A stretch of DNA of 64,000 nt from Penicillus capitatus (lineage: Eukaryota; Plantae; Chlorophyta): NCBI GenBank assembly GCA_965649825.1, contig OZ287696.1, positions 1,035,101-1,099,100 of the forward strand, written 5' to 3'. Under the pieces are notes generated by a model. The model ran no database searches and was not told where the DNA came from. It saw only the letters and a program-made list of their open reading frames with translations. A program made the position numbers and the translations under genes. Shown one piece after another: positions 7,801 through 45,878 of this stretch (position 1 is its first letter; each line of letters begins with the position of its first letter).

Positions 7801-8719
7801 TCGACTGTCGTTTTCATCTAGGATGGTGAGACAGCGCTTTACACAGCATCCCTTAGGGGATACGTTGAGGTGGTTCGCATTTTGCTCATGGCGAATGCCG
7901 ATCCCAATATCTTCAGCAAAGTCCAGACGCGTGTCGACCTCCACCCACACGACTGAGATATTCTGTTTTGCATGGCAGAGAGGGGCAACGGCGTTGCATG
8001 TCAGCGCCCAAGAAAATCACGAAGAGGTTGTCAAGCTGCTTCTAGCGAATGGCGCCAAACCCTTCCTTCGCACCAGTGTAAGGAGCTGCATTTTTGATGC
8101 TGCTTGATCTCTATGTCCAGGATGGCAGATTGGCACTGAACATTGCCTCGGGCAGGGGATCTGTCGGAGTTGCGACAGCTCTGGCCGATCGAATGCAACA
8201 ACTAAGAGTTAGAACAGATTCGTTGCATGATGTCGTCGATGACGTGGAAGGTGATCCGCCTGTAGGAGAACAGGAGGAGAGAGAAAGCCGCAGCACAGTC
8301 CGCGTCAGAGGCCTCGGTTCGAACAGTACGGACACAGCAAGATACCATCATAACTGGATCCCAAGCGGTAAGTCCTTCTCGAGGGTACATCCATAAGGCC
8401 ATTGGGATGATAGGGGAGCCTGACCACATCGGACTACCGTCAAATGGAAGTAGCGATTCCGGACACCTACCGGTGTCCCATCACCATGAGCCTCATGTCC
8501 GACCCTGTCGTTGCTGCGGATGGCCATTCCTACGAAAGAGAAGCCATCACTAAATGGATCAGAAGTCGCGGATGTTCGCCGCTGACCAAAGCGCCTCTGT
8601 CTCTCGACATGTTGGTACCCAATCTGAATCTGAAACAGCAGATCGAAGAATTTCGCATGAGAACACAGTCCGTACTCTCACCCCTCAGCACGACTCAAAC
8701 GACGTCGCCATCTCAGTGA
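4819..8719 (+). CDS. Ankyrin-repeat protein with C-terminal U-box (E3 ubiquitin ligase); multi-exon, start approximate
   Basis: About 20 GxTPLHxAA-type ankyrin repeats in 5360-8150. U-box IPDTYRCPITMSLMSDPVVAADGHSYEREAITKWI...SPLT...LVPNLNLKQQIEEF at 8444-8719. GT-AG introns, e.g. ~5453-5500 and ~8077-8120. Confidence 0.85.
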
Positions 8720-14500: not shown

Positions 14501-14925
14501 GTTCGCTAATGTCACTTTGCTGTCGCCCTCTGAGATCCTGTCGCAGTTGTTGATGGCGTTGGAGGAGTCGAGGGAGCGGCTGTATGAGTATGAAGTGACC
14601 TCTGGTGCTGTTAATGCACAGTCTCTTTTCGGGCTGCAGATGGATTCAAGACCAGCAGGTCTGTTCAATGCAAGAGGTGGCTGTCTATGAGCGTCAAGCA
14701 TTTTTTGCAGGATTGGTGGAGCTATGGGCAGCGGGTGGTACCTGGGGACAGATCACGGCATCGACCAACATGGACGACGGAGATATCGCCCTTCTCTTGT
14801 CTCGTACTCAGGACGTTCTGCGTCAGATCTATCTGTCAAGCTATCTCCTCGATCCGCTTAAGGACGCAGCCCGATCAGCATATCGATCCATGAACCGCAA
14901 ACCGATTCGAATTGACAGCGTGTAA
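11521..14925 (+). CDS. ISE2: Ski2-like DExH RNA helicase, plastid ISE2-like
   Basis: Motifs APTG/AGKT (split by intron), YTTPLKALSNQK, LVTGD, VMTTEIFRNM, DEVH, MSAT, HHAG, FATGTLAAGINMPART, QMAGRAGRRGFD. DSHCT-like C-terminus GLVELWAAGGTW...MDDGDIALLLSRTQDVLRQI. Arg/Ser-rich N-terminus. Confidence 0.85.
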
Positions 14926-14977
14926 TCGAACATTACAAAAAAAACACGTTCGGGTGAACTGTATTACGTCCCACGCA

Positions 14978-19805: not shown

Positions 19806-19885
19806 GTTTCAGCCGAAGGTCCGTTTTCACTCGCCGTATTCGCTGCCGTATCTGACCTGACCCACAGCCATGGCGGATTCCTCCG
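19806..19885. promoter_or_regulatory. 80-nt head-to-head spacer between RRP12 and the dioxygenase-like gene (duplicated at 40585-40665)
   Basis: Divergent ATGs at 19805 (-) and 19886 (+). The same spacer is conserved in the inverted copy. Confidence 0.55.
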
Positions 19886-20162
19886 ATGGTGTCACCAGAA
19901 TTCCCGCGTCAGAGCGTCTGGGTGTACAAGGAATGCGTTCCCGAGCACTGTCTGGCGTTAATGCGCGATGCGGCGATGCTCTACGCCCATGCTCCGAACT
20001 ACTGGCTGCTGAAAGTCCTCCTCGCTGGATGATGATCCTTCATGGGCAAGTTCATGTCCAATGCACAGGAAGCCCTGGAAAACGACCTCGACCGTCGGAT
20101 GCTAACGCCTGCCAAATTTGGCATCTGGCACTTGTGTCATGCGGTCGCAAAGCGCCGACTGC
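19886..20162 (+). pseudogene. Truncated 5' copy of the 2OG-Fe(II) dioxygenase-like gene
   Basis: MVSPEFPRQSVWVYKECVPEH...NYWLLK/EALENDLDRRMLTP matches 40584-40308. Homology stops at ~20162, before GAEWWVQ and the HFD motif. Confidence 0.85.
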
Positions 20163-20939
20163 TACTTTCGCCCTTCTCCGAGATCTATCAGAGCTCAGTC
20201 CGAGAGAGATTCGCACGTCTGACACAGATAGCTACCATTTTGTGCTTCACGACGCGTCCCAGAAGGACGGGGACGGGGAAGACTCAGCAAAGGTCGGTCA
20301 CATCCTCCATGCTCTTTGCCTCCATCCGTCGCTCGGGAGCAAAGGGGTGTGGTGAGCAGATTCGTTTGCCCATGCAGTACGAGAAGACAAGGGATCTGGT
20401 CTTCCTGGAAGAGGCCATGCCGACCATCACCGTCTCGATGTCTCTCCACTGTGAGATCAGTTCACTGGCGATGTGGTAGGTTGCCTGCCGAGCGAAGTGA
20501 CGTTCGACCCATTTTCGTCCGACGTCAGACTGCCGCGGAGAAAATCGCGCATTCTGATTGGCTAGCCGCGGTCGAATTTGTTGCAGCTGTCACATCCTCG
20601 ACCATAAAACGCGAGGCGCCATACCTGTTTTCGCATTTCCGCTTTTCTGAACTGTGCGCCACTGCTCGCGGTGGACTACGGCTTCACCACTCGGCAGCTC
20701 CGGGACTCCTTCCTAGCCGAGTCCAAGACCTGACACGCAACCGTCGCCTCCAGCGCAAAGAATTCCACTTCGTCGCCAAGGTACGTACTCCCTCTCTCTG
20801 GATCCGTTTCACTTGGGGGTGTGTCTGGCAGAACTGAAAGGCCGGCGGCTTTGCGGCGGCGGAGGGAAGCACCTGCGCCGCCGAGTCGTGCCTCCCAGCG
20901 TCCAGAGAAGAAGCTCGAGACCCGGCAGCTTCAGAGACT

Positions 20940-21610
20940 CCTTCCAGGCCGATCTCTACCTCCAGGTGGTGGGGACGAGCTAGGAGTCGGAAGGGATCGA
21001 GTCCATCGCCCACCGCGATCGGCGCATGGACCAGGTGCCGCCTGAGGAGCTCGAGCTCCTCGTCGACCGGCTGTCCCGTAACCGGCTGGCGGATCTGCTC
21101 GACCTCCTCTGCCGTCTGAAGCTGATCGAGGGCAGCGTCGCCGCGAACGCGAGCGGGGCGGGGCTGCTGGAATCCTCGAGGTTCGTCGCACAAGACACAG
21201 GTCTCGCCACCTCCGCAGACGAAAGACAAGTCTGCTGAACACCGCGTTTCTAGGAATCATCGAGGAGCCCGAAGCATTTGACGGAACGAATCCGACCCAA
21301 CGGCGGACGTTCGATGCGCCCTCGACACGGCGGAGTGCCTCGAAGCGTACTAGATGCGACTGGAGTCCGTTTTCTCACAGCACCGCCGTCAGCTGATGAG
21401 GTCCTTCTTTCCGGCTGCCGTGGCGTCGGAGGTGTGCGTCATCGGCAACTTGTTCAACCCGAAGACGATGACGAACGTCCAAGTGGATGACGCTCCACGA
21501 GCTGATGGAGGACATGGATCCGCTCGATTGGGAGAGAGAGGACATCGCCAAGAAGATGAATGTCGCCTACCAGCAGGTGGTACGACTGAACCGCAATCGA
21601 TGCCGCAAGA
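20940..21610 (+). pseudogene. Internal fragment resembling TFIIIC B-box-binding subunit (GTF3C1/Tfc3)
   Basis: FQADLYLQVVG...MDQVPPEELELLVDRLSRNRLADLLDLLCRLKLI and REDIAKKMNVAYQQVV recall plant TFIIIC motifs (ELFLQVVGS...LMD..ATGRLS.LIDILRRLKLI; KIAKDLNLTLEQV; recalled from memory). In-frame TAG at ~20979; no N- or C-terminus. Confidence 0.6.
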
Positions 21611-21895
21611 GATCGTTGAAGGCTGCCAGAGAGCCGAAAGGAGACGAAGAAGACAAGAAGCCGCGCAGAGTCATACCTCGAGCTGCCAGGAAGCCAAACC
21701 ACATAAGACCGAAGAGGTTTGCCAAAAGGTGCCCATCCTTTCTGCCAGGGATCCCTCTCCTCACTCTGCGCGCAGGACGGAGGATGCAGTCTCCGGAGTG
21801 GAGAGCGAGTCGAGCGTACGACGCGGGACGAATCTGGAGTGGCTGAGGAGGTCGGAGGAGACGCGTGTGAATCATGCAGACATCAGCCCATGGAC

Positions 21896-22200
21896 AGCAA
21901 GGGGCATGTACATGAGTCTGCCGTCGATCTGCCTCGATGCAGATCGACGCAGACCTTGTACGTAGCTACCTCCGTGTGCATGAGTCTGCCGATGATCTGC
22001 CTCGATGCAGATCGACGCAGTCCTGCACATGGAGGCGGCTCAGAATGACGTAGCTACAGCCCATAGCTACTGCCATGTGCACGAGTCTGCCGTCGATCTG
22101 CCTCGATGCAGATCGGCGCAGTCCTGCACATGGCAAAAACTATCCAAGCCTGGAACAACGCGTCTACCGAGTCGTCCTCCGTGAAGGCGAAGCCGCTGGT
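21896..22200 (+). repeat. Hairpin array 1: three tandem ~55-63-nt imperfect palindromes plus a conserved tail
   Basis: Core GTCGATCTGC-CTCGAT-GCAGATCG(A/G)C, extended by CTGC/GCAG and (GC)CATGTGCA/TGCACATG(GC) arms. Confidence 0.9.
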
Positions 22201-22642
22201 GCCACTGCAAAATACCCCATTCCATTACCTCCTCGACTCGCAATTGAATCAAGAACTCCCATGACGTCGGATTTTAGAATGGCCGAAAGCCCAGAGAGCA
22301 AAGATTTCGAGTATCATTTTCTTCTACATCACTCCCACTGAGTCCAACCGCCTCTGTCATAAACTACTGAGCCATCTGAAGGAACGCGAAGCTGCTGGTG
22401 TTCTGCATCTCCGAGAATTCAACACCACTCCCTATCTCATTCCCGCTTCAGAATCGAGTTTAACAGAATTGCCTGCCACAGACGATCCAATGAACGCCCT
22501 CATCTGTTTCCAGATTGTGATGTGATGTGCGAGACTTTGCTGATATCTGTGTGTCAAACATGTTTGTTTTTGATGTGACATTTGTTCGGACGCATCATCC
22601 ATTGTTAATCAATTTTCAACTCAGCACGTGCGTTACGCAACC

Positions 22643-22817
22643 ATGTTAAGCGACAGCGTTGCAGCGAAAGTCATCGCCGCACTCTTCTCTTGCGTCTCTG
22701 TCGGGATTTCTCTCAATCAGGTGTGTCTCTATCTGCGTCTATCGCGCCCATTTGACCTTCTGTCGTGTCCCACAGATTATCATGCACTTGAAATTCTATA
22801 CCGAGCCTGTCTTTCAA
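22643..22817 (+). pseudogene. First two exons of a TMEM184/OST-alpha (LAZ1-like) transporter gene
   Basis: Spliced (intron 22721-22775): MLSDSVAAKVIAALFSCVSVGISLNQ-IIMHLKFYTEPVFQ. The TM helix followed by HL..YTEP..Q is characteristic of the family; the rest of the gene is absent. Confidence 0.7.
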
Positions 22818-22851
22818 GTAATCTACTGCTCGGCTGACAGGACAACCGACA

Positions 22852-24734
22852 GAGCTGGCGAGAGGATCTTGTAAAATACTGCTTGATGAGCTAGGTCGTG
22901 ATGGAGACTGCGGCATGGAAGCTGTATGACACGGCTCTCCGTATCCCGCTGGAAGTCACGATCGACATTCCTCCAGATGTCAGGATGCCTACCTTGCCTC
23001 CGTGCGCACCTCTTTCGGCGGCGTCTTCAGATTCGTTTGCCGCTGGACCCAGTGCGCCTCTGGCCATTCCGACCAAGTTGTCGTCTCGCGCAAAAAGGAT
23101 TCCCGATAGAAAGGTGATAGAGGTGTCCGACGCAAACTCGGTCGATGGAGGACGCGTTCGAAACACCGAGATCGGGGAGACGCAAGGTGTGGACATGGCA
23201 GAGGTGCGGCTCCATCCGCCGCTTCCGGCGAGTGGAGAGATGTGGCTGTCCGTTCCTCGGTGTTTCGGCTGGCGAGTCGAGACGAGGCAGCAGCGGGAGA
23301 TGATGTTAGGCGCGGATTCAGTTTCTGTCCTTCCAATGCGTCTACGCGATCACCCCGTTTGGAGAACTGATGGACGCGGATTCGACGAGCGAGATGCAGC
23401 TGACCTACTCTGCTTTGCCTCAGTGCGTTGTTCTAGCCTGTAGCGGATACTCCGCCTTCATTTTCATCGTCTTTCATACTATTTTCAGTGATCGATTCTG
23501 CTTCTCCATATACTCATCTATTTACTGCGCTACACGCTTAAACACTCCCTTTGCATTGCATTTGTGCTTTTCAATTTCATGCAAACTGTGGTCTCGTGGC
23601 TTTCATCTGTGGTCATTGCTCAGAAGGCAGCGGCCTACCAGAACAATTGCAAAGCAATGATGCAAGTTCAATAATTGTCGAACAGCTGGTCGACGAGGAA
23701 AGACTCTTTGCGGCCACATTTCTTTCGAATATCCATTTTCCAAAGATTTTGGAGTTGGTTAGTCCGTAGGACAGATGCGTCATACAGGACACACTATTCC
23801 GTATCGAGCACTTTGATTGTCGAATTGCATAGCCCGTCATCATTGTTTCTAGGCGTTAAGTTTTCGCACTTCAGGAATCACCTGCTGACGCCAATCGCAT
23901 CAGCAAACATACGAGAGCAAACTTGTCTTCGTGTATGTAATACACGTGACTCCAATCGTCTTGCCATGTCAGTGACATCAACGTTCATGCGTCGCCATCA
24001 GACGAGCGTTCAAATGTCGTTCCGACGATCTCAAATCCAACGAGCGGTACGCGGAGACGCATCGACCTCTTTGTCGTTGTCGGAGCGAACGACAAGCGAT
24101 TGTACAGGCCTCGTTAGAGAAATCTGTCAAGAACGAGCAACGAGGACTGGAGAAAGGCGGATCGCCCAAACAAGATGACGCCCTGAAAGTGGGGCGGCAG
24201 AGTTGTCGCTCGATGCGTTGAATGGCGCAGCAGCAGTCAGTTGACGCCATCTGAGCTATCGAACAAGGGTTCCTCGAGGTGCGCTCTACGGTCTCCTGTG
24301 ACTGTGGTTCTCTGGAGTTCACGCTGTTCCTGTATGATTTGTTCGTTTCTGTAAATGTCTGCCGTTGTATCTCCTTTGCTGCTATTTGCTCGAACTGCGA
24401 AGTCGCCAAGGCGATAGAACGAAAACGACGCGTTCGTCATTCCAGTGCGCGCTCTCTTCTTTGCCTTAAAAAGCTGCGCGGGCTGTTATGCACTTCTCAG
24501 ACAGCGGATAGAGTCCACGTCAAATCCTGTGCGCTCACTGTGCAGACAACTTCGAAATGGCGATTGTTCGTCGTGTGCTGTTCTTCTCAGAGTGCATCGT
24601 CTGCTGTGGATGACAAGCAGCGACGTCTTCATGTTTTACCATTGCCGACGTGCCGTCGCCCGTTCTGAGAGACATTCGACCTTTTGCTGGTTCGAATCGA
24701 CTTGCAGTTGAAAGAGCGAGCTATAACTGCCTAA
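22852..24734 (+). repeat. Unknown dispersed family R, copy 1
   Basis: SWREDLVKYCL...WKLYDTALRIPLEVTIDIPP and YSALPQCVVLAC blocks are shared with 34582-37268, 43730-45850 and (distal part) 52168-53045. Confidence 0.8.
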
Positions 24735-25074
24735 TACATATTTCACTACAGAAATGTCGCTTGAATCCCATGGAGATTGTTGTCGACTCCGATCACAACG
24801 CAGTTCGTAAATGTGTACAACGTTGGGCTCATCGGCAATCCACACTATCATTGGGGGGTTCTCAGTGCATGGATAGATTCTTTCCACGAACGGCGACAAG
24901 ATCGAATACTTCGCACAGCCTGGCGTCTTTTCGCAGCCGAAGACTCTGCGATGACCGATGACGCGTGCGAAAGCAGTCATCTGCATTCCCCAATTGACAT
25001 ATCCACTGGGCGAGTGTTCTCAGGGGAGGCCTATCGATTCGTGAGATCCCGGATCAGATCGCGGTCGATTGAAG

Positions 25075-25865
25075 ATGGACGGTGTAACACTGAAAACGGC
25101 GAGCGGCGTCGAACTGCCTCCCCAACATCGCCGATCGCGCCTTCGTTCTCGATTGTTTATTCCTCGATTTAGTCCGCGTTTCGATCGACAACAGATGGAC
25201 GATCGTCTCGCTTCTGAAAGCGGCTGGCCGATGGGCTCCCCCGCGAGGGATTATAGTGTCGACCCGGCTGCCGAGTCCAGGCGGCAGACTGAACTTCGAG
25301 AATTGCCGCAGGGGGCGAGGCTGAGCGGTTGTCGGATGCCAGTCGATCTCCTCGAAGCCGTCATCGAGTCGTTGATCGAGGGAGACCAAGTGAGCGGCCG
25401 ACGACCCTCCGGACAACACAGACGACTCGCTTTCAGTTTTCGACGGCCTTGGAGGTTTTCGATTCCGCGATGCGGAGAATCGAACTCGGCGTATCGTCGG
25501 AGACCAGACCGAACAGCGAGACGTTCGAACTGCTCCTGAAGAGCTGTCACGTCAAAGCATTGCCAGAGAAGGCAGTGGAGATCCTATTGAGGATGCTGGA
25601 CCTCGGAATGGACCCCAGCACAACGTCGATTCGCCACATCCAGGATGCCATCTCCATCGGACAGGTTTGGGACAGGAAGCTGAGAAGGAAGAGAGACGGT
25701 GGCGTGCATGGGGGAAGGCGTCCAGACGGTTCAGGCGGTGTTCGTTCGGGCGATGAGCGCTTGTCGGCACTGAGCTCGCGGATCTGCGACCAACCGATCC
25801 TGTGCCCTAGACGATGGGACGTCGTACCTAACAAGCAATCGCCTTGTCCTTCTGCGGAATGTGAT
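25075..25865 (+). CDS. Small pentatricopeptide-repeat-like protein (boundaries approximate)
   Basis: After an intron (~25390-25436): FSTALEVFDSAM...RPNSETFELLLKSCHVKALPEKAVEILLRMLDLGMDPSTTS, a recognisable PPR motif. 3' end unresolved. Confidence 0.6.
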
Positions 25866-25875
25866 TGGCAGTGCC

Positions 25876-28800
25876 ATGTACGCCCCCTTTTCGCCGTTGA
25901 CGTTACTGCGCCGCGATTTCCGTCTGCGTTTCTTCAAAGCGTCCCTCGCACTCGGCGCAGCGCCGAACATGTCTAACAGCAGCGCAGAGAAAGTGCGTTC
26001 GAGGAGTGTCCGGTCCTTCGCTCACGCGTGTCTGCGACCAGGCCGTCGTGCGCATTCCCGACGCCGAAGAGAACTTGACAATCACCCTCACCATCCGCGA
26101 CAGAGTGCGGACGCTCAACCGGTCCCCCTCGATCGCACGGAGTCCATGGCAGAAGAGATGTGTGTTGGCAGACCCAAGGGAGAGGAGCTGAGCCGATCCT
26201 TGCATCGTCTTCGACTGAGCATCCGCTCCGACAAGAGTAAGACGCCGCCGCCAAGCCAACTGCAGAGAACGAGCCAGTTGGATCCTAGAGAAGGGAAGGA
26301 ACAAACGAGCCGGTCAGGAAGAGTGTGACAGCGTCGAAGAACAACCGGTCACCGTGGCTCTCTATGCGTCCGACTCCGAAGCGACGTGCGTTGCTCCCTG
26401 TCCGATCCACCCGTCTCGCAGAGGGTGGCGATTCTTGCAGTCTGGTCGACGAAGCAGTGACGAACGAGCGTGCGTGGCGAAGAGCGAGGTGGCTGATCGC
26501 AGGCGACAAGCGCTACGAGGTCGTGACGAATCCGCCCACCGTCATGAACGTGAGCCAGGCCTGTCCGCGTTTCGTCTCCCATTTCTCCATTCCAGCTGTG
26601 CCTGAACGAGAGGCCGATCGCCGGACACCCTGTCTTCCCGCTCTGTGAAGTGCGCCCGCGTTAGTTTCCGGACTGCTGCCGACCCGGGTCTTGTGCAGCT
26701 CGAATTCGCCGAAGAATCCGCCTGCCTGTGGCAGTGGTTCACCAGGACATCGAAAAGTTGCCCACTTTAGCCGCGCAGTCGGGAGGAGATCGCGTTCTGT
26801 TGATAGGCACGTCGTGGACGAAGTTGGAAGCCGCCACAGAGAGGGTCTACACTCCGGCACCGCCAGACGTGGGTCGTTTACTGGGAGTCGAGTGCACGCC
26901 GGTGGCCCGAGACGTCGAAGGAGCAGAAGAAGGAGCGTCTGTCTACGGCGAGTCGCGTTTCGCCGAACAGGGTTTGTTTCCTCCTTGCTCGGCACCGATG
27001 CACGTGCCGTTCGCCGACAGGTCCCGTGGCTCCCGGAAGGGAGAAGGCGTCCGGAGACGGCCGACACGAGCTGACGCCTCGGACACTAGAGTCCCCGTCC
27101 TTCCGCGTGGTCACCTACAACGTCCTCGCCGACTCCTACGTTTCGAGGCCGAACGCGAAGAGCGTTTTCGGATACTGCAGCCCCAGGCGCGCCCTCGTCC
27201 CCTGTCTTTTGAGACTGACGCTGAGTTCTGTCAGCGATCTCGACATCGACGTGCGGAAGCAGCTTGTGCTCAAGGAACTGCTCGGCTACCACGCAGACAT
27301 TGTCTGCTTGCAGGAGTGCGACCAGAAAGTCTTCGACACCTACTACCGTCCCCATCTCCAGGCCGAAGGTCACGTCAACGGAAGGGTACCTCTCCTCCAT
27401 CTGTCGTGTCTGTAGGATTCGCCGGCGTCTTTGCTCAGAAGAGTGGCAGCACGAGAGAGGGAGAGGCCCTCTTCGCCCGCCGATCGCGATTCGAGGTGCG
27501 TCCGTCCGCGATTGCGCCGCCGCAGACCTTGCATCGCGTGCACTCAGATTGCTGCGCATGTCCGCCTGAACATGAACGAAGTCCTGAACGGCGAGCTTCC
27601 CGCACACCTCCTGCCCTTTCGCGAGATGATCGCCGAGTGCAAGAACATGAGCACGGCGCTCAAGAACGTTGTGACGATTGGCCAGGCGGTCCTCCTGAAG
27701 CCGATCGGAGAAGGCGAGAAGCCGCTCTGCGTGGTGAACACGCACCTCATATCTCATTCGCACGGAGAGCACATACGTGTCTTCCACGTCCTCGACATGC
27801 TCCACCGGGCGAGCGTCTGGGCGCGATCCGTCGAAGAGAGTGCGCAGCTGGTGCTGGTCGGCGATCTGAATAGCAGCGTCGATCTGGCCACCGGGAAAGT
27901 CGACGGTATGCTGTCTGGCTCTCGGCGATGCAGAAGCCGCAACGCTCTTTGTGGACGCAGCCGCACTGACGCTGCTGCGCGACGGCCGCCTTGGGAAGGA
28001 CCACTGGGAGTGGAGCGAGTGCCGGAAGTTCCGCTGGACCAAGGTGATCCGCCCCTGCTCGGCTCGACACCGACTCCGTCTGTTTCTCCGCCCAGATGAC
28101 ACCAGAAGACGATGTGTCGCGGCTGTACGAGAGCGCAGACGAGGGCGAAGGGGATCCAGTCGAAGGCATCGACGTCGAGGCGCCGTTCGAGCTTCGAAGC
28201 GCGATGAGTAGGAAACGAACGATCGAAAGCTGTTCGTTCGATCACGTCTAACGGACGTTCGACTGTGTGTCAGGTCTCGAAACGCCCTACTCGAACTTCA
28301 CTGAAGGCTTCAAAGGACTGCTGGACTACGTTTGGTACGAGCCGCGCTTCGTAGACGTCGAACGAGACATTCCCATACCCTCTCCCAAGAGGATAGGGAA
28401 GCCATGTCCCTCCGAGGTGTACCCGTCCGATCATCTGGCGGTGAGTGGCTATCTCTGTACCGAGTGTCGTAGCTAAGAAACCACTGTCGGCACCGCAGGT
28501 CGTCGTGGATATGCGTTTCAAAGACGAGAGGAAGGGCTCTCCGGGTGGCGGAGACAACGCCGAGGGACGAATCCTTCCAGCCGTCGTTGAACACGTCGAC
28601 AGAGGCGTCGAGGAACTCGAGAGAGGCAGACTCGTCGGTCCGGATCTCGCTTCTCGTTCTCCACTCTCATCCTCTGCGACGCCTAGGCCTGCCCACGGAC
28701 ACGATCTACGGATTGGCGGCGGACGCAGGGAACGGAAACGCCGTCAACGCACTGTATGCGGCAAAGGGTCGTTCGACGGATGTGCCGCTGGCCGTGTGCG

Positions 28801-29311
28801 TGGCCGAGGTTCAAGATGTCGCCAAACTGTGCGAGGTGCATCACCTGCCCGACGGGTTGCTGGATGCCCTGCTTCCCGGACCCGTTACGGCAGTCCTCCG
28901 ACGGAAGGAGACGTCTCTCCTCGCGCCGGAGCTCAATCCAGGTCTCCCTTCGATCGGTAGGTTCAGATGGAACCCACGGTGCCATCTCGCGTTTCGGCTG
29001 CATCTCTAGGCGTGCGGGTACCGGATGCCGAGTTCGCTCGCCTTCTGTGCAGTCGGCTGCACAAACCGATCGCGCTGACGAGCGCCAACAGGAGCGGAGA
29101 TCCGTCAAGTGTGTGCGTTTCTGAGTTTCAAGAGCTCTGGCCGGACTGTGCCATCGTCTTCGACGGTGGCCGAAGCTCAGGATCGAAACTGGGATCGACC
29201 GTGGTGGACCTGTCGTCATCGGGCCAGTACAAAATTCTGCGCACAGGGGACGGTCTCCAGTCCGTTCTGGAAGCTCTAGAACGTTTTGGCGTGCGAGAAG
29301 TTTCCGAGTGA
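25876..29311 (+). CDS. Fusion protein: PDE12-type EEP deadenylase (2',5'-phosphodiesterase 12) + YrdC/Sua5 threonylcarbamoyl-AMP synthase
   Basis: EEP motifs FRVVTYNVLAD, DIVCLQE, CVVNTHL, VGDLNS, FTEGFKGLLDYVWY, YPSDHLA. Via intron 28441-28498 the frame continues with no stop into VVVDMRFK...GRLV/GLPTDTIYGL, YAAKGR, LLPGPVT, IGVRVP, TSANRSG, STVVDLS. Confidence 0.88.
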
Positions 29312-31324
29312 AATTGCATTTGTCTGTTGCTCACGCTGACGCGTTTCTTTGGCGGAGCTTTCGTCAGATGAACAGAGGGAACGCTTGTTGCTCGACGAAA
29401 CTGTTCTTGGAATGAATTCACAACGATCGTCTTCTACGCGCCCGATCGTACGAAGAACCTCCTTTGCGAGCTGCGCAGTGGTTTCTTGCTCTGCATTCCT
29501 TGAACCACGGTGACCAATTAGACGACGCCTCTTTTGTGCAGCCATCTTTTCTCGCGAAAGAAAAGCAACTGTCAAAGCGAAATCTCGACTCGCTTGATCG
29601 CCGTCTCTCGTGTCTGTCACTGACGACATACTGTCAAGAGAAGATCCATTGAAAATCTCCGGCCCGAGCAAAGCAAGAATCTTTAAAAGAGACCATCTTA
29701 CGGATTTTGGAAGTTAGGTCGGCGCCCAAGTAGGTAGAGAGTTCGCCACATCGTTTCAGAGAGCTACGCGCCAATATTTCGACATGCACACCAGGTGATC
29801 ACCATCAAACCAATAACCAATTCATACCATCCTAAATCAATCTATGTTGGCCATTGTCGTATCATCAGAAGAGTGCTCAAATGAGAAATCGACAACTCGT
29901 GCTGTCAAGTGATTGATCGCGATTCTAATGAAGACATCCTTGAGAGGGTCTTACCTCGCCCTTCAACCACTCGAATGTAAAAAGCACAAATGGTTACATT
30001 TCTTTAATACTTGTACGACAGTGTGTTTCAAGCCAGTACTGAGATGCAATAGGTATAAGTCCACAGGGTGATTTCTAGAACATGATTTGCTAAACGCCAG
30101 AAATGGGTATCCGGTTCGGTTTTACATGCAGCCTCTCATGTACCAGTCATAACCACCACTTTTGCATGAACCTCAAGAAATAACATTCCTCGACATGTGA
30201 CTGGATAACGGCACAGTCCGTTCCACAGCAGGAGATTTGGATGCTGGAAGCGTTTCAGTCGAGTCTAGCGCTTGCTTATTGCTCGGCGGCTTCGTCGTTG
30301 GTGATTACGTCGCCATCACTAACTGCCTCACACGGTTGCGACTGTCATTTGCGGTCAAAAACCCTGGGCGTTTCTGAATCGTATTGCTTCTTTCGTTTCT
30401 TCGAGTTTTGGACGTTTCTCGCTGCGTTTATCTTTTCCAGCAGAAACGCTTCCCGGTCGCCGCTCTCTTGACAATTTTCGTCTATCGCCGTCCAAGCCGC
30501 TGCCTTTCGACGCACTCGCCCTCCAAGAAGGATCTGCTGGATAGAGATCGGAAGCCGACTCCAGCCATTCGGCACTCCGTCCGCGTGCGCCTTCGATAGT
30601 GAGTCGAATCTCTCCTCCTGCCCTCGTGGGAAATTCCTTCACAATACCCAACGTCCATTTGCGTCCTGCAGGTCGCCAGTCGACGAAAACTCGCCCTCCG
30701 CGACCGGAAGGATCGACTCGGAACTGTCCAGAACGCGGGTCATGGGTGTGGTGGACTCGACAATGGAGTCCGGTGCGGCTGTTCTCTGGACTGCCGGGGG
30801 GCTCGGAGACGCGTGGCATGGGACGGTTGACGTCTGAATCGACAGAGGTAGCTAAGGATGGAGCTTCTAAGAGAATCCAGTGTGAGCCATGCAGGTACCA
30901 AACTGTCTCCGGCGCAATGGACAAGGGACATTTCAGAAGACGACAGTAGAATGGGCACCGCATCGTGATATGGCGCCTGATGGTGGTCTGACAGTCGACG
31001 GACAACCATGGTAAGTGCAGAGGGACGCCGTTCATTTTTCAGAACCCTGTGTTTCGATGTAGCTATGGACGAGATTATTGGTCGTCCGTCCTGATCAGGA
31101 CTACAGCAACAGTGGACGGATATTGACGGGTTGGAAGCTCTCGATGGTTTGATGAAAAGATCGCCGTCGCCGAGCGACATGCCATCGTCAATAGCGACGC
31201 GACGCCTGTGACAGGAGACGGTGGACATGATGACAACATAAACACGACGCTGCTGGAAACCGGCGACTTGGCCAGTCGAAGAGGAGACGCATGAAGCATG
31301 CAGACGTCAGTCAACACATGGTAA

Positions 31325-32129: not shown

Positions 32130-32977
32130 CAAGAGACGACACGTGACGAAGCCGACATCCGACAACCTACGATGAAGCATCTGGCAGAATGACATCCTAC
32201 GATCCGACATCCGAGAGCCCATTGATGAAGACGACGACCAACGATGAAGCATCTGGCAGCAGACATCCTACGATCCGACATCCGAGAGCCCATTGATGAA
32301 GACGACGACCGATGATGAAGCTCCCAGCAGCCGGCAATCTATGATCCGGAATCGGACAAACGATGATGAAGACTATAGCCTAGATCCGAAGTTCGACAAC
32401 CCATCGATGAAGACGACGATTGATGATGAACCACCTGGCTGCCGATAATCTATGATCCGAAGTTCGACAGCGGACAACCGATCAGATCTGACATCCGACG
32501 GCAAACAACCTATGATCTGACATACAACAGCCTACGATGAAGCCTCAGGCAGTCTATGATCTGAACTCCAGCAGCAGACAGTCTGTGATCTGACATTCGA
32601 CGGTGTACGATGAAGACGACAGCCTGCTACAAAGACACTGCCCATCAGATCGAACATCTAAGAGCTTGTGAAGAAGACCAGGACATCGATGAAGACGATC
32701 AACCATTCGATCGGACATCCGAAGGCTATGATGAAGACGACTACCTATCAGATCGAACATCTGAGAGCCATCGATGAAGACCAGGACCTGCGATGAGGAC
32801 GATCAACTATTCGATCGGGCATCCAATTGATATAATGATGACGACTACCTATCAGACCGAACATCCGAGAGTGTGCGATGAAGACCAGGACCTGCGATCG
32901 AGCGTCCAATATCTAATGACGAAGCCAGCAGCAGCCTCCAGCAGCAGACAACCTATTCGATCCGATATCCAACAGCT
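32130..32977 (+). repeat. Degenerate GATGAAGACGAC/GATCTGACATCC-rich tandem repeats
   Basis: Recurrent motifs gatgaagacgacgac, ctatgatccga, gatctgacatcc with irregular period, grading into the 81-bp array. Confidence 0.75.
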
Positions 32978-33375
32978 ATGATGAAGATGACTTACCTGCA
33001 ATGAAGCCTCCAGCAGCCTCCAGCAGCATACAACATTTCTGATCTGACATTCGACCGTTTGTGACGAAGATGACTTGCCTGAGATGAAGCCTCCAGCAGC
33101 ATACAAGATTTCTGATCTGACATCCAACAGCATGTGATGAAGATGACTTACTTGATGAAGCCTCCAGCAGCCTCCAACAGCATACAACATTTCTGATCTG
33201 ACATCCAACAGCATGTGATGAAGATGACTTACTTGATGAAGCCTCCAGCAGCCTCCAGCAGCATACAACATTTCTGATCTGACATCCAACAGCATGTGAT
33301 GAAGATGACTTACTTGATGAAGCCTCCAGCAGCCTCCAGCAGCCTCCAGCAGCACATAATTTTCGATCTGACATC
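32978..33375 (+). repeat. 81-bp minisatellite, ~5 units
   Basis: catccaacagcatgtgatgaag recurs at 33121, 33202 and 33283 (period 81). Confidence 0.9.
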
Positions 33376-33587
33376 AGCAGACAGCCTTTTATCAAGCCGA
33401 TCCCGTGCATTTCAGTTGTTGGGCGATATTATCAATTACCTCTGGACGAATAATTATATGGTGTTTTTGCATATCTTTTGGGCATTTAAGAACTCTGGAC
33501 TTGAACAAACTAGATTTTATAACCTTGATGATGTAGTGCTGATTCGATCACATTTTTTCCGATTTGTTTAATAAAAGAGGGATTCTG

Positions 33588-33718
33588 TGTTTAGGCCATC
33601 TCATTCGTGGCAATTGTACAGACACCTGCTAAGCTGTTTAGGCCATCTCATTTATGGCAATTGTACAGACACCTGTTAAGCTGTTTAGCCATCTCATTTG
33701 TGGCGACTGTACAGACAC
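33588..33718 (+). repeat. 47-bp tandem repeat, 3 units
   Basis: tgtttag(g)ccatctcatt..tggc.a.tgtacagacac at 33588, 33635 and 33682. Confidence 0.9.
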
Positions 33719-33933: not shown

Positions 33934-34590
33934 CTACAGAAAATTCATGAACGAGTATGCAGGATCGGCGCCAACCCAGTGTGGGGGAGAGGTCTTCGTC
34001 ACAGATGGATAGTCCTGAACACACACAGCTCAGGGACGAACAAGCGAGATCCGTGCTTGCCCGTATCATCTCGCAGTACTTTTTTACGTTAGGATAGTCT
34101 TTGAATGTCATTCCAAACCTTGCTAGAATCAAGAGCATCGGCGCCAACATCGCATCTGGTGAAACATGGCACTTGCAGACAGAACCAGTTGCCGAGGAGC
34201 AGTACCTGCGAGAGTGAATGCGTCTGTTGCTGCGTATCTCTGCGCACCTAGATATGCATCCCACAGGGCCATCTCTGCCTGGAGGCACGCAGTGCTGATC
34301 TGATACTCCAGTCGGTCGACCATACCTTGATTTCTTCGATCTGCTGCTGAGCATGTTGATTCTCCAGTTCCTTCCTCTGTGACACGATTCGGATGCTTCC
34401 TGCTGGTTAACAGATCGATACCCTACCATAGAATAAGTGTAGTTTCGTTGCTTCATGTCTGTTACGATGGCTTCGAAGTATCGCTGTAACACCTGGGCCG
34501 AGCATCCGTCGAAGGATAGGGGATGTGCGTGCAACAACGACTTTTGCTTTTTCGACCGGAGTCGACGGGAGAAGCGGTTTTTCAGGTAAC
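33934..34590 (-). pseudogene. Glutathione S-transferase C-terminal portion; N-terminal thioredoxin-fold domain not found
   Basis: Spliced: PEKPLLPSTPVEKAK/VLQRYFEA...YSM/RKELENQ...EIK/AEMALWDAYLGAQRYAATDAFTLA/DAMLAPMLLILARFGMTFKDYPNVKKYCEMIR/DYPSVTKTSPPHW...FL-TAG. Upstream sequence is repeat family R, with no frame giving VP.L.DG...ES.AI. Confidence 0.7.
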
Positions 34591-37268
34591 CGCCTGCGCC
34601 GCACTGCGAGGCGTCGCTCGCCGACCGTAAAAGTCATTCTTCTGCAAACTCACAGTCTCTCACACTTTCTTTGCAGACTCTGTGGCGGGGTGGGCATCTC
34701 TTCTTCTTTTAACCACTATTCTAACATTTTTCTGTGAGACATCACACTTTTCGATAGAGTGACATTCACAAGCTTTTTTACGCAGATTGTAACACCTTCA
34801 CTGGATATTACACGTTTCGAAAGAGTGACATTTACGACCTTTCTTGAGCTAGAATTATAACGTTTTTCATTGAATGTCAATCACACTTTTCATATTTCAC
34901 ATCGTTTAAGCATTGACTCCATTCTCGTTATGACGTGTGCGACTTATGATCTGATGACAAAGCGCTAAAATGTCGACGCCTTCCTGACTGTTGTGAGGGG
35001 TGTTTTAGGATGCAGTGCATCGTCAAGCTCGAAGATGTCTGGAATCTACAGATCTCTTCGCTGCCTCTTCTTTCGCAGACAGCCAATGACGGCGCCGACT
35101 CCGTGCGGGCACCGCGACTAAGTTTTCGAAACTCGCCAAACACGTCGCTTCTTATGACTGCAGACAACTGCTCAGCTCGCTACGTGGCGCACTCTTGCCT
35201 GTCTGCCAACACCGCCGTGCCACGCTTCTGTCCGAGAGGCTTGCACTCAGGAGTCCAATGTACTTGCAGTGCTCGAGATCTCGGAATCGTGCCTATAAAT
35301 GATAATAAACCTGTGGCGGCTGTGGCGACGAGGTGGCGAGAGAAGAGCGATAGACGAGAACCGCGTCGATGTGCTTGCCGAACTCTCAGGCAGTCGCAGT
35401 TCGCCTTTTCAGACTCAAGTCGATTCGAAACGGCACAGGTCTGGCGTCGTTCAGTACGGGCGACGGCACGGTCACCCGAAACAAACATAAAGTCACTGCT
35501 CGTCGTTGACAGCAGGCGACGTGCTTCGAAGAAAAGAGCGCGAGGTGAACGATCGACTCGGCGAAACTGTCTACAGATTGCGCCTCCTAAGATTCGTCGT
35601 GGACTCTTTCCCTCGTCTAAAGAGTGCATTACAGTCCATACAGTTGGTCAGCGCAAAGAACAGTACACGCATTGAAACGACTAACTGTGCTTTTTCGTGT
35701 CATCGCCTTGGCGACTTCGCAGCTCGAGCAAAGGCAACAGAGGAGGAACACGGAGGAGTTTGACGAAAGACGAACAGGTGCAAGAACAGTGAAGAAGTCT
35801 GTGCTGAGGCCACAGTCGAAAGAGGCCGTCGAGCACCGAACCTCCAGGAAAGCTTGTTCGACAGCTCGGATGGCGTCAGCTGACTGTCTTTGTGCCATTC
35901 CATGCATCGAGCCATATCTCTACTGCTTACACTTAAGGCGTCTTCTGATCTGGGCGATTCCGCTTGCGACAATTCGAGTTGCACATGTTCGACGGATCTA
36001 TTTGACTCGGCAGGCCTGCACAATCACTCTCTTTTAAGTTTTTCTTGACAAAGACGACGAGGTCTACGCGTCTCCGCTTATCGTTCGTTCGGCTTTGAGG
36101 AGATTACCGGGACGACGTTTAAACGCTCGCTGAACTGAGATGTCGTGACATGGCAAGAAGAACAAAGTTACATAGATTGCATACATGCATACAGATCTCT
36201 TCGTGTGTTTCTGCTACGACTGACGTTAGCAGGAGATTCCCCACAGTTCGAAAAGTCGACTTAAAGAGACAACGAATGGCGGTCTCATGCAGTACAACGA
36301 TCAACGTCCTCAATACAGAAATGTTTTCTTGCATCAGTCATCTATCCCACGAACCCATTTACTCAAACATCTCCATAAAATGGAGATTCGAAAGAAATGC
36401 GACTGTGACGATCTTTCCTCATCGACCAGCTATTGTACAATGATAGTTTACACATATTTTGATTTGAACACGATACTGCCTTCCAGGCAGTTAGACAAGA
36501 ATAGAGCCAGGAAAGCACAATTGCTAGACATTGAAAGGTTCGAAGACGCTTAAAATGATAAAGTGCACAGCAGCGCACTGTGTGGGTGCATGTGTCGAAA
36601 ACATAGTCGATCACTGAAAACAGGGTGAAAGACGACGAAACTGATGGTGGGGCAACTGCCACAGGCTAGAATAACACACTGCGGCAAAGCAGAATATACG
36701 ACACGCATTTCGCGTATCGAATCCACATCCATCAGTCTTCTGAGTTAGGTGATGGTGTAGATGCATTGAAAGGGCAGAAACCGAATCCACGACTGGCATC
36801 ATCCCCCTCTGTTGCCTCGTCTTGACTTGCTAGTCGAAACATCGAGAAATGAATAGTCGCACAGCTGCACTCGCCGGAAGCAGCGGATGACGCCACACCT
36901 CTGCCCATGTCCGCACCTTGCATCTCCCCGATCTCGGCGTTGACAACACATACTCCATCGGCCTTCGAGTTGGCTTCGGACATCTCTATCGCCATTCTGT
37001 CAGGAGTCCTTGTTCCGAGAGACGGCGACTTGGTCGGAATGGCTAGAGGCGTACTGGGTCCAGCGGCAAACGGATCTGAAGACGCCGCCGGAAGAGGTAC
37101 GCATGGAGGCGAGGCAGACATCCCGACATCCGGAGGGACTTCCGGAGGAATGTCGATCGTGATGTCCAGCGGAATACTGGGAGCCGTCTCATACAACTTC
37201 CATGCCGAAGTCTGCATCACGACTTGGCTCCTCAAGCAGTACTTCACAAGGTCCTCTCGCCAGCTCTG
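34582..37268 (-). repeat. Unknown dispersed family R, copy 2 (longest, more diverged)
   Basis: Homologous to 22852-24734, 43730-45850 and 52168-53045. Its first ~530 nt are the C-terminus of the kinase ORF. Confidence 0.8.
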
Positions 37269-45850: not shown

Positions 45851-45878
45851 GTGTCCTGTCAGCCGAGCAGTAGATTAC

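What the first reader, a model, noticed from the sequence alone, without database searches (positions are those of the whole stretch)
25876..29311. In-frame fusion of a PDE12-type deadenylase with the t6A enzyme YrdC/Sua5
Seen: the last EEP motif YPSDHLA is followed by GT-AG intron 28441-28498, then VVVDMRFKDERKGSPGGGDNAEG, a Gly-rich linker with no stop, directly into YrdC (ELERGRLV/GLPTDTIYGL...KGR...PGP...GVRVP...TSANRSG...STVVDL). Both catalytic motif sets look intact. Knowledge: PDE12 trims spurious oligo(A) from mitochondrial tRNA/rRNA ends; YrdC makes threonylcarbamoyl-AMP for t6A37, which needs mature tRNA substrates. I know these as separate genes in animals, fungi and land plants but cannot check novelty. 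Inference: a Rosetta-stone link coupling tRNA 3'-end quality control to anticodon-loop modification.
Basis: partly seen in the sequence, partly recalled or inferred. Interest (0 to 1): 0.85.

Follow-up and report, generated by a model that had tools for sequence, protein, structure and literature searches.

The report
PDE12–YrdC fusion gene: real, widespread
This is a genuine single gene that joins an RNA tail-trimming nuclease (PDE12 type) to the enzyme that starts the universal tRNA modification t6A (YrdC); the same fusion is common in green algae and already sits unremarked in databases, so it is a good functional lead but not a one-off oddity.

Summary
Window 25876-29311 (+) is one 18-exon gene with 17 introns of 46-66 nt (16 GT-AG, one GC-AG). 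It encodes 851 aa: a basic presequence, the PDE12-specific N domain, an EEP nuclease domain, a linker of about 17 residues, and a TsaC/YrdC-type TC-AMP synthase domain. Intron 28441-28498 is real. Two intron-bearing relatives keep its position and phase while its length changes. The exon after it encodes both the last EEP beta-strand and the first YrdC helix. The closest relative has Leu where the window has the 'internal Met'.

The fusion is an uninterrupted ORF in intron-poor algae and a single spliced transcript in Auxenochlorella. It occurs in at least 48 clusters at 50% identity. Named members come from Ulvophyceae, Trebouxiophyceae, Raphidocelis and the haptophyte Diacronema. Both catalytic residue sets are invariant across 28 fusions, and dN/dS is about 0.13 in both domains.

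Volvocales lack the YrdC domain, and Chlorophyceae, the class that includes them, are the one chlorophyte group reported to use Sua5. This suggests the fused domain is the working t6A enzyme.

Functional coupling of tRNA 3'-end repair to t6A is plausible but untested. Novelty is reduced because the fusion is auto-annotated in public databases, although I found no paper describing it.

The parts
25876..29311 (+). Whole coding span of the fusion gene, 851 aa. Exons: 25876-25992, 26042-26121, 26172-26236, 26289-26385, 26441-26549, 26596-26649, 26699-26756, 26807-26971, 27021-27186, 27235-27368, 27416-27495, 27548-27905, 27961-28043, 28096-28207, 28274-28440, 28499-28637, 28687-28956, 29010-29311 (TGA at 29309-29311).
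   Evidence: Model built by hand from reading frames and homologs. All junctions and exon lengths are conserved in L001. Pfam on the final protein: PF21171 39.7 bits (cut-off 27), PF03372 48.1 (cut-off 24.5), PF01300 154.5 (cut-off 25.1).
25876..25968 (+). N-terminal basic, hydrophobic presequence (aa 1-31, MYAPFSPLTLLRRDFRLRFFKASLALGAAPN). Probably an organelle-targeting peptide.
   Evidence: Read directly from the sequence. Comparable presequences of 25-66 aa occur in most full-length fusions. Targeting was not tested.
25969..25971 (+). Second in-frame ATG (Met32), 8 codons before the conserved mature N-terminus. A possible alternative start giving a cytosolic isoform.
   Evidence: Conserved in L001. 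A second Met lies upstream of the conserved start in most full-length fusions: 1-30 residues in the 13 models where the distance was computed, and seen by eye in the others. The analogy with the two AUGs of yeast Sua5 comes from PMC4615747. This is an inference.
26532..26922 (+). PDE12-like N-terminal domain (aa 151-232). The span includes introns 26550-26595, 26650-26698 and 26757-26806.
   Evidence: PF21171 scores 39.7 bits against a cut-off of 27. It aligns to residues 1-90 of the human PDE12 crystal chain 4Z0V.
27110..28522 (+). EEP (endonuclease/exonuclease/phosphatase) nuclease domain, aa 279-623. The span includes six introns. Catalytic motifs: TYNVLAD 27113-27133, CLQECD 27305-27322, VNTHL 27734-27748, VGDLNS 27857-27874, LLDYVW 28318-28335, PSDHLA 28423-28440.
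   Evidence: PF03372. PDE12 is the best PDB match at E 1e-58, against 1e-20 for CNOT6L. The residues are invariant or nearly so in 28 fusions.
27187..27234 (+). GC-AG intron of 48 nt (50 nt in L001).
   Evidence: A 2-nt indel between the window and L001 sits inside it. Only this splice gives the homolog-length sequence FGYCSPSDLDIDV and keeps the frame in both species.
28441..28498 (+). The junction intron, GT-AG, 58 nt, phase 0, directly after SDHLA.
   Evidence: L001 has 56 nt at the same position and phase. L005 has 48 nt at the same position and phase. Retaining it gives an in-frame stop at 28474-28476 and removes the last EEP strand.
28499..28637 (+). Bridging exon. It encodes the last EEP beta-strand VVVDMRFK (28499-28522), the linker KDERKGSPGGGDNAEGR (about 28520-28573) and the first YrdC helix up to the Gly codon of G-LPTDT.
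   Evidence: VVVDMRFK aligns with the C-terminal strand ALVCDLKWK of PDE12 4Z0V. The linker keeps its length but evolves fast against L001. The linker of the Ostreobium AlphaFold model has pLDDT below 50.
28574..29308 (+). TsaC/YrdC-type threonylcarbamoyl-AMP synthase domain (aa 641-851). The span includes introns 28638-28686 and 28957-29009. Motifs: PTDTIYG 28692-28712, KGR within 28761-28775, LPGPVT 28872-28889, TSANRSG 29078-29098, GSTVVDL 29192-29212.
   Evidence: PF01300 at E 3e-45. TIGR00057 equivalog scores 137.2 against a cut-off of 123.2. PDB matches are TC-AMP synthases. It is 46-52% identical to land-plant At5g60590-type YrdC.

Best explanation
Window 25876-29311 is one gene that makes one polypeptide. 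Its parts, in order, are an organelle-type presequence, the PDE12-specific N domain, an EEP 3'-exoribonuclease domain, a short flexible linker, and a TsaC/YrdC (Tcs1-type) threonylcarbamoyl-AMP synthase domain. It belongs to an old, conserved fusion family found in chlorophyte algae and at least one haptophyte. In that family the PDE12 ortholog is joined to the ortholog of plant YrdC (At5g60590).

Shown here: the gene structure, the continuity of the reading frame, purifying selection on both halves, invariance of both catalytic residue sets, and expression as a single spliced mRNA in a relative.

Inferred:
1. Both domains are active and work on the same substrate pool, namely organellar (mitochondrial and perhaps plastid) tRNAs. 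The EEP domain removes non-templated 3' adenylates, as human PDE12 does. The YrdC domain makes the short-lived TC-AMP next to the tRNA, for a Qri7/OSGEPL1-type transferase to use.
2. The two conserved in-frame AUGs give one isoform with the presequence and one without it. A single gene could then supply TC-AMP to both organelle and cytosol, as yeast Sua5 does.
3. In many chlorophytes this protein is the main or only TC-AMP synthase.
For: Gene model and junction:
- Exons and splice sites are conserved against L001, and intron lengths change by non-multiples of 3.
- L005 has the same intron position and phase.
- L001 has Leu instead of the internal Met, and its bridging exon has no Met at all.
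- The last EEP strand and the first YrdC helix share one exon.

Fusion is real elsewhere:
- P0002, P0003 and P0004 are single uninterrupted ORFs on metagenome contigs.
- The Auxenochlorella transcript contig L006 aligns to genome locus L007 in 9 blocks separated by 8 gaps with splice-like (mostly GT...AG) boundaries. One 704-nt exon runs from the EEP SDH motif to the YrdC SxN motif.
- 48 of the 171 fetched proteins (cluster representatives and their members) carry both domains.
- Named species are listed.

Both halves are functional-looking:
- dN/dS is 0.12 for EEP and 0.14 for YrdC.
- Catalytic residues are invariant across 28 fusions.
- The YrdC half passes the TIGR00057 equivalog cut-off.
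- Human PDE12 is matched at E 1e-58 with its N domain.
- The AlphaFold model has pLDDT 87.8 and a disordered linker.

Link to t6A:
- The PDE12-like proteins of Volvocales end right after the EEP domain.
- Chlorophyceae are reported as the only chlorophytes that use Sua5, probably gained by horizontal transfer (PMC10321239).
- Plants have a single YrdC (PMC3223725, PMC4615747).

Shared substrates in humans:
- t6A is carried by mt-tRNA Asn, Ile, Lys, Ser(AGY) and Thr (PMC7102964).

Two-AUG pattern.
Against: - There is no RNA or protein evidence from the window's own organism. The splice model rests on comparative evidence.
- No activity, localisation or interaction was tested.
- Targeting is judged by eye from the presequence.
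- I could not check whether fusion-bearing genomes also encode a stand-alone YrdC or Sua5. 'Sole TC-AMP synthase' is therefore unproven. Raphidocelis, a chlorophycean, still has the fusion, which blurs the complementary pattern.
- The overlap between PDE12-dependent and t6A-bearing human mt-tRNAs (2 of 3 against 5 of 22) is not significant (about P = 0.12 by my hypergeometric estimate).
- A pTM of 0.69 does not establish a fixed interface between the domains.
- Several fusion gene models start at the second Met, so the two-AUG pattern could partly reflect annotation choices.
Confidence: 0.8

Rival explanations
1. The fusion is real and both enzymes are active, but they are not functionally coupled. 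The two genes merged because both products need the same targeting and expression pattern (a shared presequence and promoter). Each domain works independently on its own substrates.
For: The linker is short, fast-evolving and predicted to be disordered. pTM is only 0.69. Linker length varies greatly between species, from about 15 to more than 70 residues. Land plants, animals and Volvocales manage with separate proteins.
Against: The fusion has persisted across very deep divergences (31-42% identity) and into a haptophyte, which is hard to explain without some benefit. In humans both enzymes act in mitochondrial tRNA maturation and share at least two substrate tRNAs. TC-AMP is labile (my own knowledge), which makes production close to the tRNA useful.
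Confidence: 0.25
2. The fusion is real, but one half is a non-catalytic passenger. Either the YrdC domain serves only as an RNA- or tRNA-binding module that steers the nuclease, or the EEP domain is a dead scaffold.
For: E. coli YrdC was first described as a dsRNA-binding protein and binds tRNA lacking t6A (PMC3223725). The window's EEP domain scores modestly on the generic Pfam model (48 bits).
Against: KxR...SxN and the other YrdC motifs are invariant in 28 fusions, as are the EEP catalytic residues: Glu, Asp, Asn, His, Asp/Asn and Asp-His. The YrdC half passes an equivalog-level cut-off. The lineage where the domain is absent belongs to the one chlorophyte class reported to have a replacement TC-AMP synthase.
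Confidence: 0.08
3. The locus yields two separate proteins. Either the intron at 28441-28498 is usually retained, giving a PDE12-only product that stops at 28476, or YrdC is translated on its own from the Met of VVVDMRFK.
For: The intron contains an in-frame stop, and an ATG lies at 28511-28513. There are no transcript data for this organism.
Against: The retained-intron product would lack the final EEP beta-strand. In L001 that Met is Leu, and its bridging exon contains no Met. The intron differs in length by 2 nt between the window and L001 while both flanking exons have no indels. Intron-poor relatives have a continuous ORF, and Auxenochlorella has a single spliced transcript.
Confidence: 0.04
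4. The fusion is an assembly or gene-model artefact that joins two unrelated neighbouring genes.
For: None, beyond the fact that the window comes from an unidentified assembly.
Against: The same arrangement appears in independent assemblies from many sources: ENA, JGI, Logan, NCBI genomes and EukProt.
Confidence: 0.01

Closest known systems
Human PDE12 (2',5'-phosphodiesterase 12, the mitochondrial deadenylase; PDB 4Z0V, 4ZKF, 4Z2B)
   Same: It shares the PDE12-specific N domain followed by the EEP domain. All catalytic motifs are present, and the last strand aligns to the end of the crystal chain (E 1e-58). An N-terminal presequence is also present. Its known role is removing spurious 3' oligo(A) from mt-tRNAs and 16S rRNA (PMC5544427).
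   Different: Human PDE12 ends right after the last EEP strand and has no YrdC domain. Identity is only about 30%. Activity and localisation of the algal protein are untested.
Eukaryotic YRDC / Tcs1 (human YRDC; Arabidopsis At5g60590)
   Same: It is a single-domain TsaC-type TC-AMP synthase without a SUA5 domain. It has KxR...SxN with Thr before SxN. It is 46-52% identical to land-plant orthologs, which database sources name 'yrdC domain-containing protein, mitochondrial'.
   Different: Plant and animal YRDC are stand-alone proteins of about 280 aa with their own presequence. Here the domain is the C-terminal module of an 851-aa protein.
Yeast Sua5 (Tcs2)
   Same: It makes the same product, TC-AMP. 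One gene serves both cytosol and mitochondria through two in-frame AUGs (PMC4615747). That is the arrangement I infer from Met1 and Met32.
   Different: Sua5 carries a C-terminal SUA5 domain and has Pro rather than Thr at the signature position (PMC10321239). It has no nuclease domain.
Other YrdC-domain fusions: HypF, TobZ (YrdC-like plus Kae1-like), Mycoplasma TsaC-HemK, and the 1008-aa multi-domain t6A synthase in PDB 8IDE
   Same: They set the precedent that the YrdC fold is fused to partners from the same pathway (PMC4615747, PMC9654439).
   Different: Those partners are the transferase, or another translation-factor modifier. None is a 3'-exoribonuclease.
Database members of the same fusion family
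   Same: These have the same architecture and are 35-42% identical over the full length: Ostreobium quekettii CAD7697151.1 / A0A8S1J0W7, Bryopsis sp. GMH35852.1, Ulva mutabilis UM024_0071.1, Auxenochlorella KAL6780190.1 ('TPD1'), Helicosporidium KDD73263.1, [Myrmecia] bisecta KAK9819723.1, Raphidocelis GBF89998.1 and Diacronema lutheri EP00963_P004313.
   Different: They are only auto-annotated, as 'Threonylcarbamoyl-AMP synthase', '2',5'-phosphodiesterase', 'telomere recombination protein' or 'hypothetical'. I found no functional study and no discussion of them. The window's protein itself is not in the collection.

Membership tests
PDE12 family (EEP deadenylase with the PDE12 N domain) | EEP fold with the full catalytic set: Asn in YN.LA, Glu in LQE, His in NTHL, Asp/Asn in GD.N, Asp in LDY, and Asp-His in SDH | tested here: met
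   All motifs are present in the window protein. They align to human PDE12 and are invariant or nearly so in 28 fusions.
PDE12 family (EEP deadenylase with the PDE12 N domain) | PDE12-specific N-terminal domain (PF21171) upstream of the EEP domain | tested here: met
   PF21171 scores 39.7 bits against a cut-off of 27 at aa 151-232. The region aligns to the N domain of 4Z0V.
PDE12 family (EEP deadenylase with the PDE12 N domain) | Closer to PDE12 than to CCR4/CNOT6L, Nocturnin or ANGEL | tested here: met
   PDB search E-values: PDE12 1e-58, CNOT6L 9e-21, Nocturnin 2e-17, ANGEL2 1e-8.
PDE12 family (EEP deadenylase with the PDE12 N domain) | Poly(A)-specific 3'-5' exoribonuclease activity and mitochondrial location | not testable with these tools
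   The only evidence is a basic, hydrophobic presequence.
TsaC/YrdC (Tcs1) threonylcarbamoyl-AMP synthase | YrdC-fold domain (PF01300) that reaches the equivalog-level model TIGR00057 | tested here: met
   PF01300 scores 154.5 bits. TIGR00057 scores 137.2 against a cut-off of 123.2.
TsaC/YrdC (Tcs1) threonylcarbamoyl-AMP synthase | The KxR...SxN catalytic tetrad, which separates YrdC from YciO (PMC3223725) | tested here: met
   K688-G-R690 and S776-A-N778 are present in the window protein. They are invariant in A3 and A4.
TsaC/YrdC (Tcs1) threonylcarbamoyl-AMP synthase | TsaC signature Thr (not the Sua5 Pro) directly before SxN, and no SUA5 domain (PMC10321239) | tested here: met
   The sequence reads L-T-S-A-N. 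The protein ends about 20 residues after the YrdC domain.
TsaC/YrdC (Tcs1) threonylcarbamoyl-AMP synthase | TC-AMP synthesis, or complementation of sua5 or tsaC mutants | not testable with these tools
   This needs bench work.
PDE12-YrdC fusion family (algal; defined here from database members) | One ORF or mRNA carrying PF21171, PF03372 and PF01300 in that order, with the last EEP strand followed by a linker and the YrdC domain | tested here: met
   The window model aligns over 95-97% of its length to fusions from Ostreobium, Bryopsis, Ulva and P0002.
YciO (non-t6A paralog of YrdC) | Lacks the KxR...SxN signature and does not reach the TsaC equivalog score | tested here: not met
   The signature is present and the equivalog cut-off is passed. 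It is therefore not a YciO.

The most novel reading that the evidence does not exclude
In most chlorophytes, and in some haptophytes, this fusion is the only TC-AMP synthase in the cell. It physically couples two steps of tRNA maturation. The PDE12 module docks on and repairs the tRNA 3' end, removing destabilising oligo(A). Only then does the tethered YrdC module supply TC-AMP for t6A37 on the same molecule. This would be a built-in quality checkpoint for ANN-decoding organellar tRNAs. By this reading, the unfused human PDE12 and YRDC would also cooperate on mt-tRNA Lys and Ser(AGY).
Probability: 0.2. Interest if true: 0.7.

Novelty: new variant of a known kind. Interest (0 to 1): 0.55.

Why it matters
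Both halves are disease-relevant human mitochondrial enzymes. PDE12 variants cause neonatal mitochondrial disease (PMC11729904, seen). YRDC variants cause Galloway-Mowat syndrome, according to text quoted. No link between the two enzymes is discussed in the literature I could search.

An ancient fusion that selection has maintained is a classic predictor of functional interaction. It gives a concrete, testable hypothesis: that deadenylation and t6A formation are coordinated on the same tRNAs. It also offers tractable algal systems in which to test this.

The fusion explains a gap in t6A censuses of green algae, where the 'TsaC' is in fact an 850-1100 aa multidomain protein. It also gives a rationale for the Sua5 replacement reported in Chlorophyceae and seen here as YrdC-less PDE12 proteins in Volvocales.

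The value is tempered because the architecture is already visible in public databases and domain fusions among RNA-processing enzymes are not rare.

Tried and rejected
1. A longer gene that includes the upstream PPR-like block (25336-25688). I rejected this as part of the CDS. The connecting stretch 25813-25875 evolves neutrally (dN/dS 1.08). L001 has a TGA after WDRKL, and the gap between the block and the gene differs by a non-multiple of 3. Pfam PPR hits are sub-threshold at E 0.1-0.2.
2. An unspliced reading of exon 9 (SPRRALVPCLLRLTLSSVSDLDIDV). I rejected it in favour of a GC-AG intron because of a 2-nt indel against L001 and the sequence length in homologs.
3. An acceptor at 26745 that skips LEFAEESACLWQWF. 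I rejected it because WQW is conserved in P0002 and in human PDE12.
4. Handing the spliced window protein to the representative search.
5. Synteny. The window and L001 share only the gene block 25284-29466. The kinase-fusion-peroxidase synteny of Auxenochlorella, L004, L002 and L003 is absent from the window.
6. A neighbour-joining tree of YrdC domains. It was too star-like to decide between one and several origins of the fusion.
7. Identifying the organism. There was no Rfam hit and no tRNA in the window. The best protein matches are bryopsidalean ulvophytes, at only 39-42% identity.
8. Searching the supplement of PMC10321239 for the fusion accessions. None was found.
9. The third homolog search, using YrdC domains. 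It returned only land-plant YrdC in its top 120, so it did not show whether fusion-bearing species also have a stand-alone copy.


Full report
**1. The observation**

I read 25000-30500 on the + strand and translated the three forward frames.
- The motif YPSDHLA ends at 28440.
- GT is at 28441-28442 and AG at 28497-28498.
- The next exon reads VVVDMRFKDERKGSPGGGDNAEGRILPAVVEHVDRGVEELERGRLVG without a stop.
- Two more short introns, 28638-28686 and 28957-29009, lead through the YrdC motifs to TGA at 29309-29311.

Working upstream with homologs as a guide, I built an 18-exon model that starts at ATG 25876 and encodes 851 aa. The 17 introns are 46-66 nt long. Sixteen are GT-AG and one, 27187-27234, is GC-AG.

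**2. Is the splice model real?**

The protein search found P0001, an intron-blind ORF call on an ENA metagenome contig. I fetched that contig as L001. It matches the window only over 25284-29466, at 78% DNA identity.
- Seventeen of the 18 exons have the same length in both sequences, and one differs by 3 nt.
- Every splice dinucleotide is conserved.
- Exon identity is 78-89% with no indels. Intron identity is 59-76% with indels.
- Intron lengths differ in 12 of 17 cases, 10 of them by non-multiples of 3. The junction intron is 58 nt in the window and 56 nt in L001.
- The spliced L001 ORF is open throughout and 84% identical in protein.
- dN/dS is 0.13 overall, 0.12 for the EEP domain and 0.14 for the YrdC domain.

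A third, more distant intron-bearing relative, L005, has introns at the same two positions and phases on either side of the bridging exon.

Three facts dispose of the 'two proteins' alternative.
- VVVDMRFK aligns with the final beta-strand of human PDE12. The bridging exon therefore encodes the end of one domain and the start of the next.
- The Met in that strand is Leu in L001, and the L001 bridging exon contains no Met.
- Retaining the intron truncates the EEP fold in both species.

**3. Is the fusion real elsewhere?**

P0002, P0003 and P0004 share 31-37% identity with the query. Each is a single uninterrupted ORF carrying both domains on a metagenome contig from an intron-poor alga.

I ran an exhaustive profile search of 1.84 billion cluster representatives and then did a local domain check. 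Forty-eight of the 171 fetched proteins carry both domains.

Named members are:
- Ulva mutabilis, Ostreobium quekettii and Bryopsis sp. (Ulvophyceae)
- Auxenochlorella protothecoides, Helicosporidium sp. and [Myrmecia] bisecta (Trebouxiophyceae)
- Raphidocelis subcapitata (Chlorophyceae, Sphaeropleales, by my own taxonomic placement)
- the haptophyte Diacronema lutheri

For Auxenochlorella there is RNA-level evidence. Logan contig L006 carries an uninterrupted 879-aa ORF. It aligns at 96.8-100% identity (eight of nine blocks at 99.5% or more) to genome locus L007 in nine blocks. The blocks are separated by eight gaps of 128-204 nt with splice-like (mostly GT...AG) boundaries, so L006 is a spliced transcript. 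One 704-nt exon runs from the EEP SDH motif to the YrdC SxN motif.

**4. What the parts are**

Pfam on the final protein gives PDE12-like_N at 39.7 bits (cut-off 27), Exo_endo_phos at 48.1 (cut-off 24.5) and Sua5_yciO_yrdC at 154.5 (cut-off 25.1).

The N-terminal 638 residues match human PDE12 crystal chains at E 1e-58. The match covers the PDE12 N domain and the whole EEP domain. CNOT6L scores 9e-21 and Nocturnin 2e-17.

The C-terminal 213 residues pass the NCBIfam equivalog TIGR00057 (137.2 bits against 123.2). They match solved TC-AMP synthases.

The KxR...SxN tetrad separates YrdC from YciO (PMC3223725), and it is present. So is the TsaC-type Thr before SxN (PMC10321239). There is no SUA5 domain.

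The domain is 46-52% identical to land-plant At5g60590-type YrdC.

In an alignment of 28 fusions, the EEP catalytic residues and the YrdC residues K, R, S and N are invariant.

An AlphaFold model of the Ostreobium member, built with that alignment, has mean pLDDT 87.8 and pTM 0.69. Its linker (residues 619-629) has pLDDT below 50. The picture is of well-folded modules on a short flexible tether.

**5. How it probably works (inference)**

Human PDE12 removes spurious 3' oligo(A) from mt-tRNAs. The tRNAs most affected by its loss are Lys, Ser(AGY) and His (PMC5544427).

Human YRDC, working with OSGEPL1, installs t6A on mt-tRNA Asn, Ile, Lys, Ser(AGY) and Thr (PMC5951830 and PMC7102964). The two unfused human enzymes thus share a compartment and at least two substrates. 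That overlap is not statistically significant.

Plants are reported to have one YrdC (PMC4615747 and PMC3223725).

Within Chlorophyta only Chlorophyceae use Sua5, apparently through transfer from fungi (PMC10321239). Correspondingly, the PDE12-like proteins of Volvox and Edaphochlamys stop right after the EEP domain. This complementary pattern suggests that the fused YrdC is the working t6A enzyme elsewhere. Raphidocelis, a chlorophycean that keeps the fusion, shows the pattern is not clean.

Most full-length fusions have a basic presequence of 25-66 residues. A second in-frame Met follows it, upstream of the conserved N-terminus: 1-30 residues away in the 13 models where I computed the distance, and seen by eye in the others. 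In the window these are Met1 and Met32, both conserved in L001. This resembles the two-AUG dual targeting of yeast Sua5. It could let one gene serve both organelle and cytosol.

I therefore favour a bifunctional tRNA-maturation enzyme whose coupling is at least by proximity. The main rival is convenience co-targeting without substrate hand-off.

**6. Comparison with what is known, and novelty**

The components are textbook enzymes. The fusion exists in NCBI and UniProt under automatic names: 'Threonylcarbamoyl-AMP synthase', '2',5'-phosphodiesterase', 'TPD1' and 'telomere recombination protein'.

Seven full-text searches and readings of the main t6A reviews and censuses found no description of it. 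Known YrdC fusions (HypF, TobZ, TsaC-HemK, the 8IDE protein) involve other partners.

I rate it a new variant of known kinds. It is real and conserved and it generates a testable hypothesis. It is neither unique to this genome nor invisible in databases.

The window's organism is unidentified. The best full-length matches are Ostreobium at 42% and Bryopsis at 39%. It is probably a chlorophyte with very short introns.

**7. Limits**

- There are no transcript or protein data for this organism.
- No test of activity or localisation was possible.
- I could not establish whether fusion-bearing species also have a stand-alone YrdC.
- The origin of the fusion, single or multiple, is unresolved.

Noticed in passing
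window 14623-24734 versus 48378-40308: There is a large inverted segmental duplication. Segment 20318-24734 matches 48378-43960 at 96.4% over 4.4 kb. Segment 18563-20162 matches 41909-40308 at 94%. Segment 14623-15328 matches 42605-41896 at 87%. The fusion gene lies in the unique stretch of about 15.6 kb between the two arms. Older copies at about 71-72% identity lie at 22836-24732 / 37282-35388, 35161-37282 / 43736-45860 and 34581-35532 / 52168-53116.
   Followed up: partly
window 25336-25389 and 25437-25688 (+), with a 47-nt GT-AG intron at 25390-25436: A small conserved ORF ends less than 200 nt upstream of the fusion ATG. It has a PPR-like helical hairpin, but Pfam PPR hits are only E 0.1-0.2. 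Against L001, dN/dS is 0.30 in this frame and 0.84 and 1.4 in the other two. L001 has a 1-nt deletion and a TGA after WDRKL, whereas in the window the frame runs on to 25976 and overlaps the fusion's first exon. It could be a tiny separate gene, or an upstream cistron or uORF of the same transcript.
   Followed up: partly
window 27187-27234: This is a GC-AG intron in a gene whose other 16 introns are GT-AG. It is conserved as GC-AG in L001.
   Followed up: yes
window 32160-33718: A cluster of tandem repeats with periods of 71, 104, 81 and 47 nt. The 81-nt array is 98% identical between copies.
   Followed up: no
L007 1-7099; L004; L002; L003: Gene order is conserved around the fusion in Auxenochlorella and in intron-poor metagenomic algae. 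A protein kinase with an OSR1_C domain lies upstream, and a peroxidase lies downstream on the opposite strand. Neither neighbour is near the fusion in the window or in L001.
   Followed up: partly
L001 9310-17438: The window's closest relative shares only the fusion gene block with it. Downstream in L001 lie an ML-domain gene, a TRM13 tRNA methyltransferase and CEP104. None of them has a counterpart in the window.
   Followed up: partly
proteins P0130, P0139, P0148: The representative search turned up other, different fusions of the same eukaryotic YrdC subfamily. P0130 has an N-terminal extension of about 250 aa. In P0139 the YrdC domain is followed by about 260 further residues. P0148 is an 860-aa protein with YrdC at its N-terminus and a long Cys-rich C-terminal region. 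I did not identify any of these extra regions.
   Followed up: no
proteins P0006-P0009 (Volvox, Edaphochlamys): The PDE12-like proteins of Volvocales end directly after the EEP domain. This matches a published report that Chlorophyceae are the only chlorophytes that use Sua5 instead of TsaC.
   Followed up: partly
window 5549-8107 (+), 11871-14045 (+), 36732-38837 (-): These are long uninterrupted ORFs, in contrast to the 18-exon fusion gene. By eye, the first looks like an ankyrin-repeat protein of 852 aa, the second a Ski2-like DExH helicase of 724 aa, and the third a protein kinase of 701 aa. No domain search was run on them.
   Followed up: no
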